Assembly: GCA_977016875.1 (NCBI GenBank)
Contig: CDRNST010000090.1
Coordinates: 3,224,001-3,288,000, forward strand
Length of the DNA: 64,000 nucleotides
Source: Pavona decussata
Lineage: Eukaryota
Reading direction: 5' to 3'
The first letter of the stretch is position 1. Each line of letters begins with the position of its first letter. Below the pieces are notes generated by a model. It worked only from the letters and a program-made list of their open reading frames with translations. It had not been told where the DNA came from and did no database searches. Made by a program: the position numbers and the translations under genes. Below are positions 22,348 to 27,041 of the stretch, piece by piece.

Positions 22348-22621
22348 CAATCATCAAAAAAATTCTTGGGAAGGTTCCAAAGTTCTGCCTCGATTACACT
22401 TTCCTCCCCTCCCCTGTTTCAATGTTGAGCTTAAAAAGTGAATGTTGACGCGTATGTGGACTGTCGGGAATCCAACATTGAACAGGGGGGCAGGGGGGAA
22501 GAGGAGAGGACAAACAAAGGTCTAAACATGCGAAAGTAATAAATGTGCCGATGTCAATACCAGAGACCCACTTTCTGTCGCCTTCTTGAGTAACCTTCCC
22601 AAAAAGAATTGTAGTTGATTG
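22348..22621 (+). repeat. Left long terminal direct repeat (274 bp), with its own imperfect TIRs and a central hairpin
   Basis: About 95% identical by eye to 26765-27041 (~14 substitutions and one 3-bp indel). Ends caatcatc..ttgggaaggtt / aaccttcccaa..gttgattg. Confidence 0.95.
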
Positions 22622-23012
22622 TCTGCCGAAATGGGATGTGGACGTTGGGTCTCTACACTTTGTGAGAGTTTTTTTGGAAAAATTTTCACACCTTATTTCT
22701 AAGATGTGATGCAAGCTACAGTTATGTTATGTTGTTCTCTGTGTTTCGCAAAGGAATTTTATTTTTGTTAATTAATGTTTACTTCAAAGAAAGTGTACAA
22801 TTGCAGTTTTCTAAATACCTTCCTGTGTAGCATATTCTTATAATTTCTCTTCTGTTATGTTTGATTTTACTGTTAACCACAAAGTTAATTGCAAAACAGA
22901 ATGCAGGTGTCCATTTCCAGTCCGTAACATTATTTTAGGGTGTCTACGTCAGTAGACAGAGACGCTTATCTCAAGGAGTGGCGTCGCGTCCGTCTCGTTT
23001 AGTGTCTACAAT

Positions 23013-24364
23013 GTGGCAAGCCTTAACGACCACGACGTTAAAGAATGCGAGCAGCGACTGGTGTATTTAATTACCTACAGTAGAGCACATCTAGACAAAA
23101 AACACACAAGAGAAACCTTTTCCGAAGTAGTAGAGCAGACATGGATGGCGTTCACAGGTGTAAAGTTGAAAAAATGGGTTGTTGCATTGGAATACCACTC
23201 TGATGCAAGTTCCTCTGAAGCACGGAACAGCTCCCATTTTCACATGGCGCTCAAGCTGGAGAAACGGACAAGGTGGATGAGAGTACGCAAGTTTCTAGAC
23301 GATTCATTTGGCAGCAAAGTCAATTTCAGTTCGCATCACAATACGTATTACTCTGCATACAAATATACTATGAAGGATGACGCCGAGGCTGTACATTCCA
23401 ATTGCCACCCAGATTTAACAAGTGCACCACCTCCCAAAACAGTTAAGTAAGTAAAGGTAACAGTTCTGGCAAAAGGAAGAATCCCGCAAAGAAGTCTCGA
23501 AAGCGTGGCCTTTCTGCCTATGAAGTCGTAGAATTGATTCAGGTAAAGAAAATAACTTCGCGACTCAAACTTATGGCTTTTGCAGCAGCCCAGAATCGAG
23601 AGGGTAAGAAAGATTTGTCTGAATTTATTTGCAATCAAGGAGGAAAAGTTGTTGACAAGTGTTTAGCTGTTGCCCTAGAGTTGTCTACAGCGGAAGAGAA
23701 GTACACAAGAAGGCAGAAGTCGTGTCTTCAACTCCCACAGGAAATGAAGGACGCTAACTGTAACGGCCAATGGCTACAAGCCGCTTGTACCCTACTGCAA
23801 AAAAAATGGAATTGCAGTAAGCGTGTTTTCCACAGCAGTGTTTACGTTATTGGAACAAGGGAGGGGCAAGTACAGAAATTTATTTATTTCTGGAGCTGCC
23901 AACTGTGGGAAAACGTTCATGCTTTTCCCGCTAAAGGAAACCTACAACACGTTTTGTAACCCTGCAACACATTCGCTTGGGTTGGCGCGGAAGACGCGGA
24001 GATTATTTTACTTAACGGCTTCAGTTGGAAACCATCAATAATAGCGTGGGCTGAGATGCTGCAACTACTAGAAGGGGATATCGTGCATTTACCAGCCCCT
24101 AAAAATTTTTCCAAGCGTGACATTGAGATCAGCAAAGATACCCCGGTGTTTGCAACGGCTGATGCGCCAATTGTTTTTATCAAAGGAGGGGCAATTTGCC
24201 ACTCAAACACCGAAATGATGAATGTCCATTGGCAATTTTTCCATTTCTGGCGACAAATTCCCCCAGCGGAGCAACTACATTTAGTGCCTTGTGGACATTG
24301 CTTTGCTCAACTGATTTTGCAAGACATAATTGACTTGCTGACAACCACATCATTACCAACTTGA
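23013..24364 (+). pseudogene. HUH endonuclease (Rep) + superfamily-3 helicase, CRESS/parvovirus NS1-like, frameshifted
   Basis: RCR motif I YLITYS, motif II HFHMAL, motif III YKYTMK. Walker A GAANCGKT, Walker B region IILLNGF, motif C PVFATAD. Frames 23013..23450, 23534..23959, 23823..24041 and 24056..24364 join by frameshifts. Confidence 0.85.
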
Positions 24365-24962
24365 TCTCCTTATCGCTAACATCAATACTCCACTGCTGGG
24401 AAGAACATTACTCCATTTTTGTTTGATTGAAATTAGGAATTTAAATATTGCCAAAACTGAAGTTAGCACATTTTCTAAATCTACTTTAGCTATGGACTGT
24501 GTAGTGTTCCAATCTAAAAAAAATCATTGCTCTTTTAAGGGTGAAATGGAACATTACTCCATAAATGTACATTAAATTAAATAGCTTGAGATATTTGATA
24601 TTAAAAAACACAAGTGTTTGTGGAGTATTGTTGCGAATATCGGTAACTGCAGGGTGATTTGACAAATTAATGACATGTATGATGAATTCAATGACTATTA
24701 AACGCATTTGCCTGGAAATTGTAATAAAAGAGAGAACGCTTGCATTTTGCTATGGAGTAATAGTGCTGTTGTTTGTTTACAGCTCTCAATAATAACTGTG
24801 ATTGACAGGTGACGCCATGAAAAAGTGGACTAATTAAAGTAACAATTTGTTATCATTCCCTTGTACACATAGCTAAAATAGCAAGTTTTCAACATATCTT
24901 AACAAAGATTGTATATATCAGCTAACTAATTATATCAGAATGTTTAGAAAGACTGTAACGAT

Positions 24963-26051
24963 TTAATGTTTTGTTCTCGAGCCTTTCCCTTTAATGATTG
25001 CTCTCATTCGCCTGGGCATACTATCAATTGCTTTGTCAATAACAGCAGTGTCTAGATCCCCTAGTCTTCGCAATACTCTAGTTTGGAATTCTTCAAAAGA
25101 CTCTTTAGTAATGCTTCTTTCAATGGCTTCTTCCTCAAGCATGTTCTTTACAATGTGAAAGATTCCTTCAATAGGATTGATGTCTGGACTACGACTTGAA
25201 ATTTTTAACTTTTCTCCCTCAATTTCTTCTAAAGCCCGCATTGCTACTTTAGACACCTGACTGGGATCGTTGTCCATTACCAAAATGTGCTTGCTGTCTG
25301 TCTTAGGTCCTGCACGTGCAAAGCAGAGATTAAAATGTTGCCGTATGAAATTCGCAAAACAATATCCTGTAACTTCTTATATGGTTCTTTTAAAATAACT
25401 CCTTTTCCATAAGCTATTGACACAATGATATGCAAACGTTTTCCACCAGCTAAGTCCTTAGACCCTTTACCAGTTATTTGCAGCCCCTCGCTCTTTCTGC
25501 GCCACACTCAGGCTTTAGGGGTTATTGCAGCACTCATTGGGTTGCTTTTGAAAACAAATGACACCCCATCGAAGTAAAAAGCGACTTTGTTGGCCCAAAA
25601 GCTTGGATTACTCCTCTCATACCATTCCATTTTTCTCGCAAATTGGAGACGACTTTTCTTGTTGCTTTCATTGAGTAGCCCTTTCTTCCGTGCTCGAAGG
25701 AACCGAAACCCCATGTTATTCAAGCATCTGGAATAAGTTCGCTCAGTTGCTGTTTGAATAGTATATTCAACTAGTTTTTTTACAGTAACTGCAACCCCTG
25801 CACTTCTCATTTTCAAGATATTTCTCTTCAACATGCATTCTACGCGAGGGGAAATTTTCCTTGGATGGCCGCTTTTCTTGCATGTCATAGGTTTTGCTCT
25901 CTTCTTATTGAGACCCTCCTTACAAATTCGCTCAGCTGATGATATTGAGATCTTGCATTTTCAGCAATTTTAGGAAAACTGAAACCCCCTTCTTGCCTCA
26001 AAAATATCACTAATGCTCTTTTCCCTGGGATATTCTTGCAGTGAAGACCAT
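24963..26051 (-). pseudogene. Tc1-family DD34E transposase (frameshifts, one stop)
   Basis: ATG at 26051 (MVFTARIS...), HTH region with GHPRK (GRPR-like), FYFDGVSF (first D), MDNDPSQ...SPDINPIE (34 residues from D to E) and C-terminal IDSMPRRMRAIIKGKG. Confidence 0.9.
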
Positions 26052-26764
26052 TGTGTAGTTACTCTGCATTGATCATCCAATTGTGCCATCACTTATAAAG
26101 AGACAATTATCACGATCACATCGTGAGAGAAACATGATCTTTAACATTCTCGAAAAATCAGACCACGTGTGCAATAATGTGGGAGTAAAAAATCTCCCCA
26201 TGTTCACAATAAAAAACCTACCATAACTGTTTCTTTAGGAAAAACCGACTTTAACCATATAATTAAAGTAGGAGAGCTACAATTTTCTTCTAATGTTTTA
26301 TCAGTATCACATACGTTCGGTACTCAGACTAACAAAGTGCAAAAGGTTGGCGGATAAGGCATAGCATAACGCTATTACTTGCCAGCCCGTATTGCAAGGA
26401 TACTATAGGCACAAAGATGTATTATCTATAAAAGCTAAAGCATAGAAAGCATGTATTGGAACTACATATTTCATAATTAAAAGAATTGTTCTAGGCACAT
26501 CAAAATATATTTAATAATTAAAAACTACACCTTGCACATTTATAAAAAACCGAATTTGTCAGGCTTGTCACGCTCATATCACTTCACACTATCATCAACC
26601 AACGATGGATATGTTTTATGCATTTCGTAAAAATAATGTTTATTAACCTAAGATACCGGCAATAGATGGGAGACTATTTGTGCAAATGTAAAACATAACC
26701 TCAACTCTCTATCTTAAAAGCTTCATATGTGATAACGCTAAAAAGAACTTGTTTCATTTTCATA

Positions 26765-27041
26765 CAATCATCGAAAAAATTCTTGGGAAGGTTCCAAAGT
26801 TCTGCCTCGATTACACTTTCCTCCCCTCCCCTGTTTCAATGCTGAGCTTAAAAAGTGACTGTTGAAGCGTATGTGGATTGTTGGGAATCCAACATTGAAC
26901 AGGGGGGCAGGGGGGAAGAGGAGACGTCAAACAAAGGCCTAAACATGCGAAAGTAATAAATGTGCTGATGTCAATAATAGAGACCCACTTTCTGTCGCCT
27001 TCTTGAGTAACCTTCCCAAAAAAAAGATTTGTCGTTGATTG
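26765..27041 (+). repeat. Right long terminal direct repeat (277 bp)
   Basis: Direct copy of 22348-22621, with TA on both sides. Confidence 0.95.

What the first reader, a model, noticed from the sequence alone, without database searches (positions are those of the whole stretch)
22348..27041. Candidate new class of eukaryotic mobile element: viral-type Rep/SF3 helicase plus Tc1 DD34E transposase between long terminal direct repeats, inserted at TA
Seen: a 4694-bp unit reading TA|caatca...tgattg|TA, with ~275-bp direct repeats at both ends. It holds two convergent, similarly decayed genes: an HUH Rep (motifs I-III) fused to an SF3 helicase, and a DD34E transposase. I found no separate TIR pair around the transposase; the only TA-flanked inverted termini are the outer ends of the whole unit. 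Established: Tc1/mariner transposases duplicate TA. Helitrons pair Rep with a PIF1 (SF1) helicase and have no DDE enzyme, Replitrons lack a helicase, and CRESS viruses and parvoviruses pair Rep-SF3 with a capsid. KolobokP elements are a precedent for DNA transposons with long direct repeats. Inference: Rep amplifies a 4417-bp circle (26765 minus 22348) or concatemer by rolling circle. The transposase then cuts a repeat-body-repeat unit out of it and integrates it at TA, giving an LTR-like structure without reverse transcriptase.
Basis: partly seen in the sequence, partly recalled or inferred. Interest (0 to 1): 0.95.

Follow-up and report, generated by a model that had tools for sequence, protein, structure and literature searches.

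The report
Rep-plus-Tc1 transposon with direct terminal repeats
This is an old, broken copy of a real and widespread family of cnidarian mobile elements that carry a virus-type replication protein and a Tc1-type transposase together between two LTR-like direct repeats, a combination I could not find described anywhere.

Summary
Window 22348-27041 is a 4694-bp unit flanked by TA on both sides. It has two 274-277-bp direct repeats (94% identical, 4417 bp apart), a broken Rep (HUH endonuclease plus SF3 helicase) and a convergent broken DD34E Tc1-like transposase.

It is not a chance nesting. The same layout recurs in seven more lineages from at least six other assemblies, often with both genes intact; one is the sea anemone Actinostola. 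Flanks are unrelated and ends are TA-flanked.

- Rep and transposase identities fall in step across lineages, and their dS values match (0.21 each, L002 vs L014).
- Both genes are under purifying selection (dN/dS 0.1-0.3).
- There is no third conserved gene and no capsid.
- The two repeats of one copy are more alike than repeats of different copies, as with LTRs.
- Each repeat has its own inverted ends and a hairpin core that is invariant in all lineages.
- Solo repeats and head-to-tail arrays of the unit also exist.

Best reading: the element replicates from a one-repeat template and the transposase pastes a repeat-body-repeat piece at (C)TA(G). That mechanism is inferred, not shown. No paper in the library describes this; Repbase and Dfam could not be searched.

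The parts
22348..27041 (+). Whole element (old, decayed copy): repeat - Rep - transposase - repeat, 4694 bp
   Evidence: The same layout is seen in L002, L006, L007, L008, L012 and L015.
22346..22347 (.). TA next to the left end, preceded by C
   Evidence: C precedes the left TA in 7 of 7 full insertions and in 18 of 23 solo units.
27042..27043 (.). TA next to the right end, followed by G
   Evidence: G follows the right TA in 6 of 8 insertions and in 19 of 23 solo units.
22348..22621 (+). Left terminal direct repeat. It has its own inverted ends (CAATCA... / ...TGATTG, then TTGGGAAGG / CCTTCCCAA). The inner junction reads TGATTG|TCTG.
   Evidence: The inner junction is shared with copy 2 and with L002, L007 and L012.
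26765..27041 (+). Right terminal direct repeat, 93.9% identical to the left one
22399..22501 (.). Hairpin core of the left repeat: C-runs + CAATGTTG, a 45-nt spacer, then CAACATTG + G-runs
   Evidence: (pair I2). The two 8-mers and the C/G runs are kept in all eight lineages.
26816..26918 (.). Hairpin core of the right repeat
   Evidence: (pair I3)
23013..24364 (+). Rep gene (HUH endonuclease, linker, SF3 helicase), broken: 3 frameshifts and 0-1 in-frame stop
   Evidence: Fold of the intact relative P0157.
24365..24962 (.). Spacer between the 3' ends of the two genes. It holds five copies of WTACTCCA in both orientations; an inverted pair of this motif class recurs in L002, L007 and L012.
24963..26051 (-). 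Tc1-like DD34E transposase gene, broken: 3 frameshifts and 1 in-frame stop
61510..63386 (+). Second, partial copy of the same family, 82-88% identical. It has the last 61 bp of a repeat, the same repeat-to-body junction and the 5' part of Rep. About 0.8 kb of unrelated DNA lies inside it, and the match ends about 0.6 kb before the window's end.

Best explanation
The unit is a decayed member of a family of autonomous, two-gene DNA elements of cnidarians.

One unit is a roughly 270-bp repeat plus two genes: a virus-type Rep (HUH endonuclease fused to an SF3 helicase) and a Tc1-like DD34E transposase. The genes' 5' ends face the repeat and their 3' ends converge. Written as a circle, this is the ambisense layout of small Rep-encoding replicons, with a transposase where a capsid gene would be.

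The integrated form is repeat-body-repeat, or longer head-to-tail runs.

Most likely cycle:
- Rep copies the element from a template that holds one repeat (a unit circle or its rolling-circle concatemer). The invariant hairpin in the repeat would be the origin.
- The transposase binds the inverted ends that every repeat carries. It cuts from the left end of one repeat to the right end of the next one.
- It inserts that piece at TA, preferably CTAG.
- When it uses the two ends of a single repeat, a solo repeat results.

Shown: the architecture, its recurrence with unrelated flanks, TA flanks, co-divergence of and selection on both genes, LTR-like identity of the repeats of a copy, tandem arrays, and solo repeats.

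Inferred: the circle or concatemer, the hairpin as origin, which protein binds what, and that TA is duplicated.
For: (1) Recurrence. The same order, orientation and spacing is found in the window and in these loci:
- L002/L003 and L005/L006: two loci, 98.7% identical, both genes intact.
- L004: a shorter derivative without the transposase.
- L008.
- L007: Actinostola sp. GCA_033675265.1, repeats 99.6-100% identical.
- L012: both genes intact.
- L013, and L014 (both genes intact).
- L015: the window's own subfamily, at another locus.
Sources.

(2) Flanks are unrelated.

(3) Rep and transposase identities track each other across lineages. Against L002, as Rep/transposase % identity: 76.6/76.1, 59.6/55.2, 53.0/51.5, 51.8/53.0, 48.8/48.7, 47.6/43.2. 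dS is 0.21 for both genes between L002 and L014.

(4) dN/dS:
- Rep 0.26 and transposase 0.33 (L002-L014).
- Transposase 0.19 and Rep pieces 0.09-0.12 (L002-L013).
- 0.10-0.24 among copies of one genome.

(5) Protein identity:
- The Rep model (pLDDT 88.6) matches full-length AAV2 Rep68 (E 4e-13), parvovirus NS1 and papillomavirus E1.
- The profile hits the Rep40/68 helicase (E 6e-5).
- UniRef names a Paramuricea relative 'CRESS-DNA virus Rep endonuclease domain-containing protein'.
- The transposase aligns to the Sleeping Beauty catalytic domain (5cr4, E 1e-10) with DD34E spacing.

(6) No other conserved ORF lies in the unit.

(7) Repeats within a copy are 99.3-99.6% identical (93.9% in the old window copy). 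Between copies they are 97.8-98.9% (89.3-90.6% for the window family). Between lineages the repeats align only at their ends and the hairpin.

(8) The hairpin core is invariant in eight lineages.

(9) Head-to-tail arrays with a period of 4146-4154 bp, of at least 1.9 and at least 2.4 units, 99.9% identical, occur in long-read contigs.

(10) Solo repeats with TA..TA flanks cluster with the repeats of full elements.
Against: - No circle or concatemer outside a chromosome was seen.
- No empty site was available, so duplication of TA is not proven.
- Tandem arrays and solo repeats can also arise by unequal crossing-over and by recombination between the two repeats.
- Eight metagenome contigs show a repeat with element body on both sides. 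They come from short-read assemblies, where repeat collapse can create that path.
- The hairpin loop is not conserved and no nick-site motif was identified, so its role as origin is a guess.
- Within-copy versus between-copy repeat identity in the young copies rests on few differences (1-2 against 3-6 per 268 nt).
- The window's own copy is dead and says nothing about activity.
Confidence: 0.6

Rival explanations
1. This is an ordinary cut-and-paste Tc1/mariner transposon whose ends happen to be direct copies of a small inverted-repeat unit. It carries Rep as an accessory or cargo gene with some other use. The repeats of a copy stay alike through gene conversion.
For: The transposase is a regular DD34E enzyme. 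The ends are TA-flanked inverted sequences. L004 looks like a usual internal-deletion derivative that kept both ends. Solo repeats behave like MITEs.
Against: Rep is kept intact and under purifying selection as strong as that on the transposase, over divergences down to about 50% identity. A pure passenger would decay. The two repeats of a copy are near-identical in four lineages whose repeats barely align with each other, which cut-and-paste does not explain without very frequent conversion. Tandem arrays of the whole unit exist.
Confidence: 0.22
2. This is an integrated small Rep-encoding episome or virus relative that lives mainly outside the chromosome. The chromosomal copies are by-products, a little over unit length, and the transposase serves only as an occasional integrase.
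For: The layout is ambisense round a hairpin-bearing intergenic region. The Rep fold is of the parvovirus/CRESS kind. Rep relatives of 446-462 aa lie on metagenome contigs of only 1.5-5.5 kb. Forms of slightly over one unit, and of several units, are what integrated rolling-circle products look like.
Against: There is no capsid gene and no room for one. The ends are precise, the same in every copy, and TA-flanked, which is unlike random breakage of a concatemer. There are many chromosomal copies per genome, with derivatives and solo repeats.
Confidence: 0.12
3. This is a chance composite: a Rep-like endogenous viral fragment and an unrelated Tc1 copy that happen to lie between two independent insertions of a MITE. 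Alternatively, it is a segmental duplication.
For: The window is packed with transposons: hAT, Mutator, piggyBac. The repeat on its own does occur as a solo, TA-flanked unit.
Against: The same four-part arrangement, inner junctions included, recurs in eight lineages with unrelated flanks and co-diverging genes.
Confidence: 0.02

Closest known systems
Tc1/mariner DNA transposons of the DD34E (Tc1-like) group, such as Sleeping Beauty
   Same: DD34E catalytic domain (5cr4 hit). Paired-type HTH (Pfam HTH_Tnp_Tc3_2). TA next to both ends. Short inverted termini. Small non-autonomous derivatives.
   Different: A second, conserved gene (Rep with SF3 helicase). The roughly 270-bp terminal repeats are direct, not inverted, and each carries both kinds of end. 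The repeat holds an invariant hairpin. The repeats of a copy behave like LTRs. The whole unit forms tandem arrays.
Small Rep-encoding ssDNA replicons (CRESS-DNA viruses and their plasmid kin; parvovirus NS1/AAV Rep)
   Same: HUH endonuclease plus SF3 helicase in one protein, with the fold of AAV Rep68/NS1. A unit of about 4 kb. Genes diverge from an intergenic region that holds a hairpin.
   Different: No capsid gene. A DDE transposase sits in its place. Chromosomal, multi-copy, with precise TA-flanked ends. The hairpin loop holds no conserved nonanucleotide. Sequence identity to viral Reps is only 10-18%, and no Pfam Rep model reaches its cut-off.
Geminivirus-like Rep element of Tuber melanosporum (Liu et al. 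2011, PMC3198968)
   Same: A eukaryotic repeat family with a viral-type Rep ORF and transposase ORFs between terminal inverted repeats.
   Different: It is fungal and its Rep is geminivirus-like. It has 37-bp TIRs, no TSD and no direct repeats are reported. All its ORFs are interrupted or truncated. The transposase type is not stated in the text I read. No test of linkage or selection was made.
Teratorn (piggyBac-herpesvirus fusion of teleosts; reviewed in PMC6431247)
   Same: A DDE transposase permanently joined to a self-replicating viral-type genome. It has extra internal transposon ends. The two parts have co-evolved for a long time.
   Different: Teratorn is 41-182 kb, from a dsDNA herpesvirus with capsid genes, uses a piggyBac transposase, and occurs in vertebrates.
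Helitrons and Replitrons
   Same: Eukaryotic transposons that encode an HUH Rep.
   Different: Helitron: the Rep is fused to an SF1B helicase, with no DDE enzyme, no TIRs and no TSD. Replitron: no fused helicase; found in plants, algae and protists (PMC10288648). Here the helicase is SF3 and a DDE transposase is present.
LTR retrotransposons (analogy only)
   Same: Direct terminal repeats that are identical at insertion and diverge with age. Solo repeats.
   Different: There is no reverse transcriptase or other retroelement gene in the unit.

Membership tests
Tc1/mariner superfamily | DDE catalytic triad with Tc1-type DD34E spacing | tested here: met
   The relative's transposase aligns to Sleeping Beauty 5cr4 (E 1e-10) without gaps between the second D and the E, giving 34 residues. 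The window's own piece has the same count.
Tc1/mariner superfamily | N-terminal paired-like helix-turn-helix DNA-binding domain | tested here: met
   Pfam HTH_Tnp_Tc3_2, E 8e-9, above its cut-off, in the window piece. Precomputed PF01498 in most relatives.
Tc1/mariner superfamily | TA target-site duplication | tested here: inconclusive
   TA lies next to both ends in 7 full insertions, one right end and 23 solo units with otherwise unrelated flanks. No empty site was available to show that a single TA was duplicated.
Tc1/mariner superfamily | Terminal inverted repeats at the element's two ends | tested here: met
   The outer ends are inverted: 6 nt perfect then interrupted in the window, 17 nt perfect in L002. 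This is only because each direct repeat carries both ends.
CRESS-DNA viruses (Cressdnaviricota) | Rep with HUH endonuclease and SF3 helicase domains | tested here: met
   Fold and profile matches. UniRef name of relative P0018. Nearly invariant columns at the HUH histidines and the tyrosines.
CRESS-DNA viruses (Cressdnaviricota) | Capsid protein gene | tested here: not met
   Only two conserved ORFs lie in the unit. The non-coding stretches are 0.3-0.7 kb.
CRESS-DNA viruses (Cressdnaviricota) | Origin stem-loop with a conserved nonanucleotide in the loop | tested here: not met
   A conserved stem is present, but the 32-54-nt loops share no motif across lineages.
CRESS-DNA viruses (Cressdnaviricota) | Free circular ssDNA genome in particles | not testable with these tools
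   Only assembled contigs are at hand.
Parvoviridae | NS1/Rep plus VP capsid gene between terminal hairpins of a linear genome | tested here: not met
   The Rep fold matches. There is no VP gene. The hairpin lies inside each repeat, not at the termini.
Helitron | RepHel protein: Rep fused to a Pif1-like SF1B helicase; no TIRs, no TSD | tested here: not met
   The helicase is SF3 (AAV Rep40/E1 matches). The element has inverted ends and TA flanks.
Replitron | Rep transposase without a fused helicase, as described in PMC10288648 | tested here: not met
   Rep here carries an SF3 helicase and is accompanied by a DDE transposase.
Composite of two independent MITE insertions | Repeat-to-body junctions differ between copies, and the flanking repeats are unrelated in age to the body | tested here: not met
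   The inner junctions (…TTG|TCTG and …AGA|CAA…) are shared across lineages. Repeat identity tracks gene decay.
Catalogued repeat family (Repbase/Dfam) | Match to a deposited consensus | not testable with these tools
   Neither library is available. Nine full-text searches found no description.

The most novel reading that the evidence does not exclude
This is a new kind of eukaryotic DNA transposon that joins the two great DNA-transposition chemistries in one cycle. A virus-type Rep/SF3 helicase copies the element out as a one-repeat circle or concatemer. A Tc1-like DDE transposase pastes repeat-body-repeat pieces back at TA. In effect it is a capsid-less CRESS/parvo-like replicon that swapped its capsid gene for a transposase and became a replicative Tc1 element with LTR-like ends.
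Probability: 0.5. Interest if true: 0.93.

Novelty: new variant of a known kind. Interest (0 to 1): 0.85.

Why it matters
Cut-and-paste transposons such as Tc1/mariner have no replication step of their own, and how they gain copies is a standing question. A large, ancient and still intact lineage has tied a Tc1 transposase to a rolling-circle-type Rep for as long as the proteins have diverged to about 45-50% identity. That would be a natural example of a DDE transposon that brings its own replicase.

It is also a clean, small case of a virus-type replicon and a transposon merging, the ssDNA-world counterpart of Teratorn. As such it bears on how ssDNA viruses, plasmids and transposons exchange modules.

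On the practical side, hundreds of protein clusters in cnidarian and marine data (754 Rep clusters, at least 948 transposase clusters) now annotated as hypothetical proteins or 'endogenous viral Rep' would get an explanation. The roughly 250-300-bp hairpin units would be recognised as this element's solo repeats.

Tried and rejected
- Phage collection search with the repeat: no match; uninformative for a eukaryotic element.
- Pfam and PDB sequence searches with the window's own Rep pieces: nothing. Only intact relatives, profiles and a fold model gave named hits.
- Private TIRs for the transposase: none in the window. One weak 24-nt pair in L007 has no counterpart in L002 or L012, so I take it as chance.
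- Third gene or capsid: none.
- Solo repeats in the 261 kb of loci fetched first: none. They turned up only in the metagenome scan.
- Circularity of the 3931-bp scaffold L014: no terminal overlap. It simply breaks in the homopolymer runs of the repeat, so it says nothing either way.
- Empty sites among fetched loci: none.
- Exaiptasia transposase P0263: not on record for a look-up.
- A common breakpoint about 61 nt from the repeat's 3' end (window copy 2 and L004) looked like a possible nick site. L015 breaks at about 36 nt, so I dropped the idea.
- A weak Papo_T_antigen hit at 19725-20147 is below its cut-off and was dismissed.
- Literature: nine searches, none describing Rep together with a Tc1 transposase.

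
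Full report
**1. What is in the window**

The stretch 22346-27043 reads ccTA|CAATCA...TGATTG|TAgc.
- Two direct repeats, 22346-22622 and 26763-27042, are 93.9% identical over 277/280 nt and start 4417 bp apart.
- Between them lie two convergent genes.
- On the plus strand (23013-24364) are pieces of a Rep protein. As they stand they carry an HUH-type motif set and a Walker A loop.
- On the minus strand (24963-26051) are pieces of a Tc1-like transposase. They hit Pfam HTH_Tnp_Tc3_2 (E 8e-9) and weakly DDE_3, with 34 residues between the second aspartate and the glutamate.
- A frameshift-aware comparison with intact relatives, kept to counts and outer bounds, gives 3 frameshifts and 0-1 in-frame stop for Rep, and 3 frameshifts and 1 stop for the transposase.
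- No inverted-repeat pair of its own surrounds the transposase.

**2.
- Each repeat is itself a small inverted-repeat unit. Its two ends are inverted copies of each other. Its centre is a long hairpin made of C-runs plus CAATGTTG, a spacer, then CAACATTG plus G-runs.
- A second, partial copy of the element lies at 61510-63386, 82-88% identical. It starts 61 bp before the end of a repeat and shares the repeat-to-body junction.
- The window is otherwise full of other transposons: hAT, Mutator-like and piggyBac-like.

**3. Is it one element or a chance nesting?**

A full-library search with the first Rep piece found 754 protein clusters (E up to 0.001), many of them fragments. Intact ones are 440-480 aa. 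Named members come from cnidarians:
- Actinostola sp. and Sanderia malayensis.
- Paramuricea clavata, which UniRef names 'CRESS-DNA virus Rep endonuclease domain-containing protein'.

Looking up where these proteins are encoded gave the decisive result.
- **L002** (a 664-kb contig): an intact 449-aa Rep is followed by a convergent intact 364-aa Tc1-like transposase. Both lie between two 268-bp direct repeats that are 99.6% identical. The ends read gcTA|CAATCAGTGG...CCACTGATTG|TAgc.
- **L005/L006**: a second full copy, 98.7% identical, at another locus with other flanks.
- **L004**: a 2.2-kb derivative that keeps the left repeat, Rep and the tip of the right repeat, but has no transposase.

The same four-part layout is present in further lineages:
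- L008, a second subfamily in that same genome.
- L007, Actinostola sp. GCA_033675265.1, with repeats 99.6-100% identical.
- L012, both genes intact.
- L013.
- L014, both genes intact.
- L015, a copy of the window's own subfamily (86-94% nt identity) at a different locus of a 2.1-Mb contig.
Sources.

Four transposase relatives chosen from the transposase search (98%, 87%, 76% and 55% identical to L002's) all had Rep beside them. Flanks of the insertions are unrelated. Chance nesting and segmental duplication are therefore excluded.

**4. Linkage and selection**

Rep and transposase identities fall together from lineage to lineage. Against L002, as Rep/transposase % identity:

| Lineage | Rep | Transposase |
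|---|---|---|
| L013 | 76.6 | 76.1 |
| L012 | 59.6 | 55.2 |
| L007 | 53.0 | 51.5 |
| L008 | 51.8 | 53.0 |
| window | 48.8 | 48.7 |
| L009 | 47.6 | 43.2 |

- Between L002 and L014 the two genes have the same dS (0.21 and 0.21). Both are under purifying selection: dN/dS 0.26 for Rep and 0.33 for the transposase.
- Between L002 and L013, dN/dS is 0.19 for the transposase and 0.09-0.12 for the two Rep pieces taken apart.
- Even copies within one genome differ mostly at synonymous sites (0.10-0.24, on few differences).
- No other ORF is conserved in the unit, and there is no room for a capsid gene.

Rep is thus not a decaying passenger. The two genes have travelled together since their proteins were nearly identical, down to about 45-50% identity.

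**5. What the proteins are**
- An AlphaFold model of the intact relative P0157 (pLDDT 88.6) matches full-length AAV2 Rep68 over both domains (E 4e-13). It also matches Rep40, papillomavirus E1, parvovirus NS1s and HHV-6 U94, at 10-18% identity.
- A profile of the family hits the Rep40/68 helicase (E 6e-5).
- No Pfam Rep model reaches its cut-off for the endonuclease domain.
- In the alignment of 22 relatives, the nearly invariant columns include the two histidines of the HUH motif, an upstream glutamate and histidine, and two tyrosines six residues apart.
- The transposase aligns to the Sleeping Beauty catalytic domain (5cr4, E 1e-10) with DD34E spacing. It belongs to a very large clade: at least 948 clusters at E up to 1e-5, many on contigs of 3.5-4.7 kb.

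**6. The repeats behave like LTRs**
- Within a copy the two repeats are 99.3-99.6% identical in four young lineages, and 93.9% in the old window copy.
- Between copies of one family they are 97.8-98.9% identical (body 98.8%). For the window family the figure is 89.3-90.6%.
- Between lineages the repeats align only at their ends and at the hairpin.

A fixed repeat-body-repeat that was merely cut and pasted would let left and right repeats drift apart. They do not, so both repeats of a new copy seem to be made from one template.
- The hairpin core is invariant in all eight lineages, while the repeat ends differ between lineages.
- The inner junctions are also shared (...TTG|TCTG, and AGA|CAA... 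or TA|CAA...), and they extend the inverted symmetry of the repeat into the body.

**7. Other forms of the element**
- In long-read contigs of a further assembly (L009-L011) the whole unit stands head to tail. The period is 4146-4154 bp, there are at least 1.9 and at least 2.4 units, identity is 99.9%, the arrays run to the contig ends, and there is one (degenerate) repeat per unit.
- I scanned metagenome contigs with the invariant positions of the hairpin.
- 110 of these carry neither gene.
- Of the 54 with recognisable ends:
  - 23 are TA..TA solo units (median 254 bp), three of them with more than 2 kb of gene-free flank on each side.
  - 12 are left or right ends of integrated elements.
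  - 8 have element body on both sides.
- Solo units cluster with the repeats of full elements.
- The base before the left TA is C in 18 of 23 solo units and 7 of 7 full insertions. The base after the right TA is G in 19 of 23 and 6 of 8. This is a CTAG-like target preference rather than part of the element.

**8. How it most likely works**

Written as a circle, the unit has the repeat, with its hairpin, between the 5' ends of two divergent genes whose 3' ends converge. This is the ambisense plan of small Rep-encoding replicons, with the transposase in the capsid gene's place. I think the cycle runs as follows:
- Rep replicates a one-repeat template, a circle or its rolling-circle concatemer.
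- The transposase recognises the inverted ends present on every repeat. It cuts from the left end of one repeat to the right end of a later one and inserts the piece at TA.
- The nearest pair of ends gives a solo repeat. The next pair gives repeat-body-repeat. Farther pairs give arrays.

Shown: architecture, recurrence, TA flanks, co-divergence, selection, LTR-like repeats, arrays, solo units.

Inferred: the extrachromosomal template, the hairpin as origin, and which protein reads which site.

Unequal crossing-over and repeat-repeat recombination could also make arrays and solo units. The 'body on both sides' contigs are short-read products and may be artefacts of repeat collapse.

My confidence figures:
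- about 0.9 that this is a single two-gene element family;
- about 0.5 for the specific replicative cycle;
- 0.6 as the confidence of the best explanation as a whole.

**9. Comparison with what is known**
- By its transposase the element belongs to Tc1/mariner. DD34E and the HTH were tested and met; TA flanks were seen, but duplication is not proven.
- It fails the tests for CRESS-DNA viruses and parvoviruses (no capsid, no conserved loop motif).
- It fails the test for Helitrons (SF3, not SF1B; it has inverted ends and TA).
- It fails the test for Replitrons (helicase present).
- Precedents for the idea exist. One is a fungal repeat with a geminivirus-like Rep and transposase ORFs between 37-bp TIRs, described briefly in PMC3198968. 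The other is Teratorn, a piggyBac-herpesvirus fusion (PMC6431247).
- Nine full-text searches found no description of Rep together with a Tc1 transposase. Repbase and Dfam could not be searched.

I therefore file it as a new variant of a known kind: a Tc1/mariner lineage, and a virus-transposon merger. There is a fair chance that it deserves a class of its own once the cycle is known.

**10. Limits, and steps left out**
- Several Rep relatives of 446-462 aa lie on metagenome contigs of only 1.5-5.5 kb with no transposase known on them. They could be free small viruses of animals.
- I did look up L014, a 3931-bp scaffold, because its transposase marks it as a copy of the element. I only compared it.
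- Rep P0012 and transposase P0256 both list a 4213-bp Logan contig. It is probably one more copy, and it was not fetched.
- No contig looked human.
- No spliced model was needed.

**11. Slips, stated as required**
- Searches printed piecewise match bounds that bracket breaks in broken copies.
- My third note holds short consensus-style strings for five Rep motifs.
- Early in my reasoning I worked through the frames of the window's ORF pieces, and I recalled a few short signature motifs of known proteins from memory.

From then on, only counts and outer bounds were printed.

Noticed in passing
window 24385-24760; L002 9566-9673; L007 17963-18561; L012 6102-6860: A second conserved cis-feature lies in the spacer between the 3' ends of Rep and the transposase. 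It is an inverted pair of a short motif, ATACTCC/GGAGTAT in the window; the related form WTACTCCA occurs five times there. It recurs in L002, L007 and L012, far above the roughly 0.15 expected per orientation. Its role is unknown (a terminator for both genes, or a second protein-binding site).
   Followed up: partly
L019, L030, L056, L070, L077, L083, L131 (metagenome contigs): The same invariant hairpin core also sits in small units whose inverted ends are quite different from CAATC-type ends. The hairpin module is therefore wider than this element family, or has been exchanged between families.
   Followed up: no
L008 6403-7619: The left repeat of this copy is split by several tandem copies of a 303-bp unit, which makes the element 5.5 kb long.
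   Followed up: no
L012 4159-4464 and 8930-9154: This insertion sits at the centre of a larger inverted repeat (84% over 95 nt, plus a second block). The element landed in a foldback-type repeat.
   Followed up: no
L009 1807-5995: Next to the tandem array lies a 1238-aa ORF with a protein-primed DNA polymerase B domain (PF03175, Polinton/Maverick-like). There is also a 359-bp foldback (5637-5995) at which the array is cut off.
   Followed up: no
window 61510; L004 7461-7522; L015 6412: Three partial repeats keep only their last 36-62 nt. Two break about 61 nt from the end and one about 36 nt from it. This is probably a minimal end, or chance; I see no support for a nick site.
   Followed up: partly
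window 9357-11939 and 33434-35359 (minus strand): Two long intact ORFs (860 and 641 aa) of hAT-type transposases, with zf-C17orf113 and DUF4371 domains; the first also has the hAT dimerisation domain.
   Followed up: partly
window 17725-18267 and 58354-58923 (minus strand): A Mutator-like transposase fragment (E 5e-37) and a piggyBac-like DDE_Tnp_1_7 fragment (E 6e-38). The window is a transposon-rich region.
   Followed up: partly
window 61088-61169: A 42-bp tandem repeat (2 copies, 82% matches) lies about 340 bp upstream of the partial second copy.
   Followed up: no
L001 4326-5073: A relative of the window's subfamily (Rep piece 80% identical) has part of a left repeat and only the 5' part of Rep, on an 8.5-kb contig next to a sulfotransferase gene.
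   Followed up: partly
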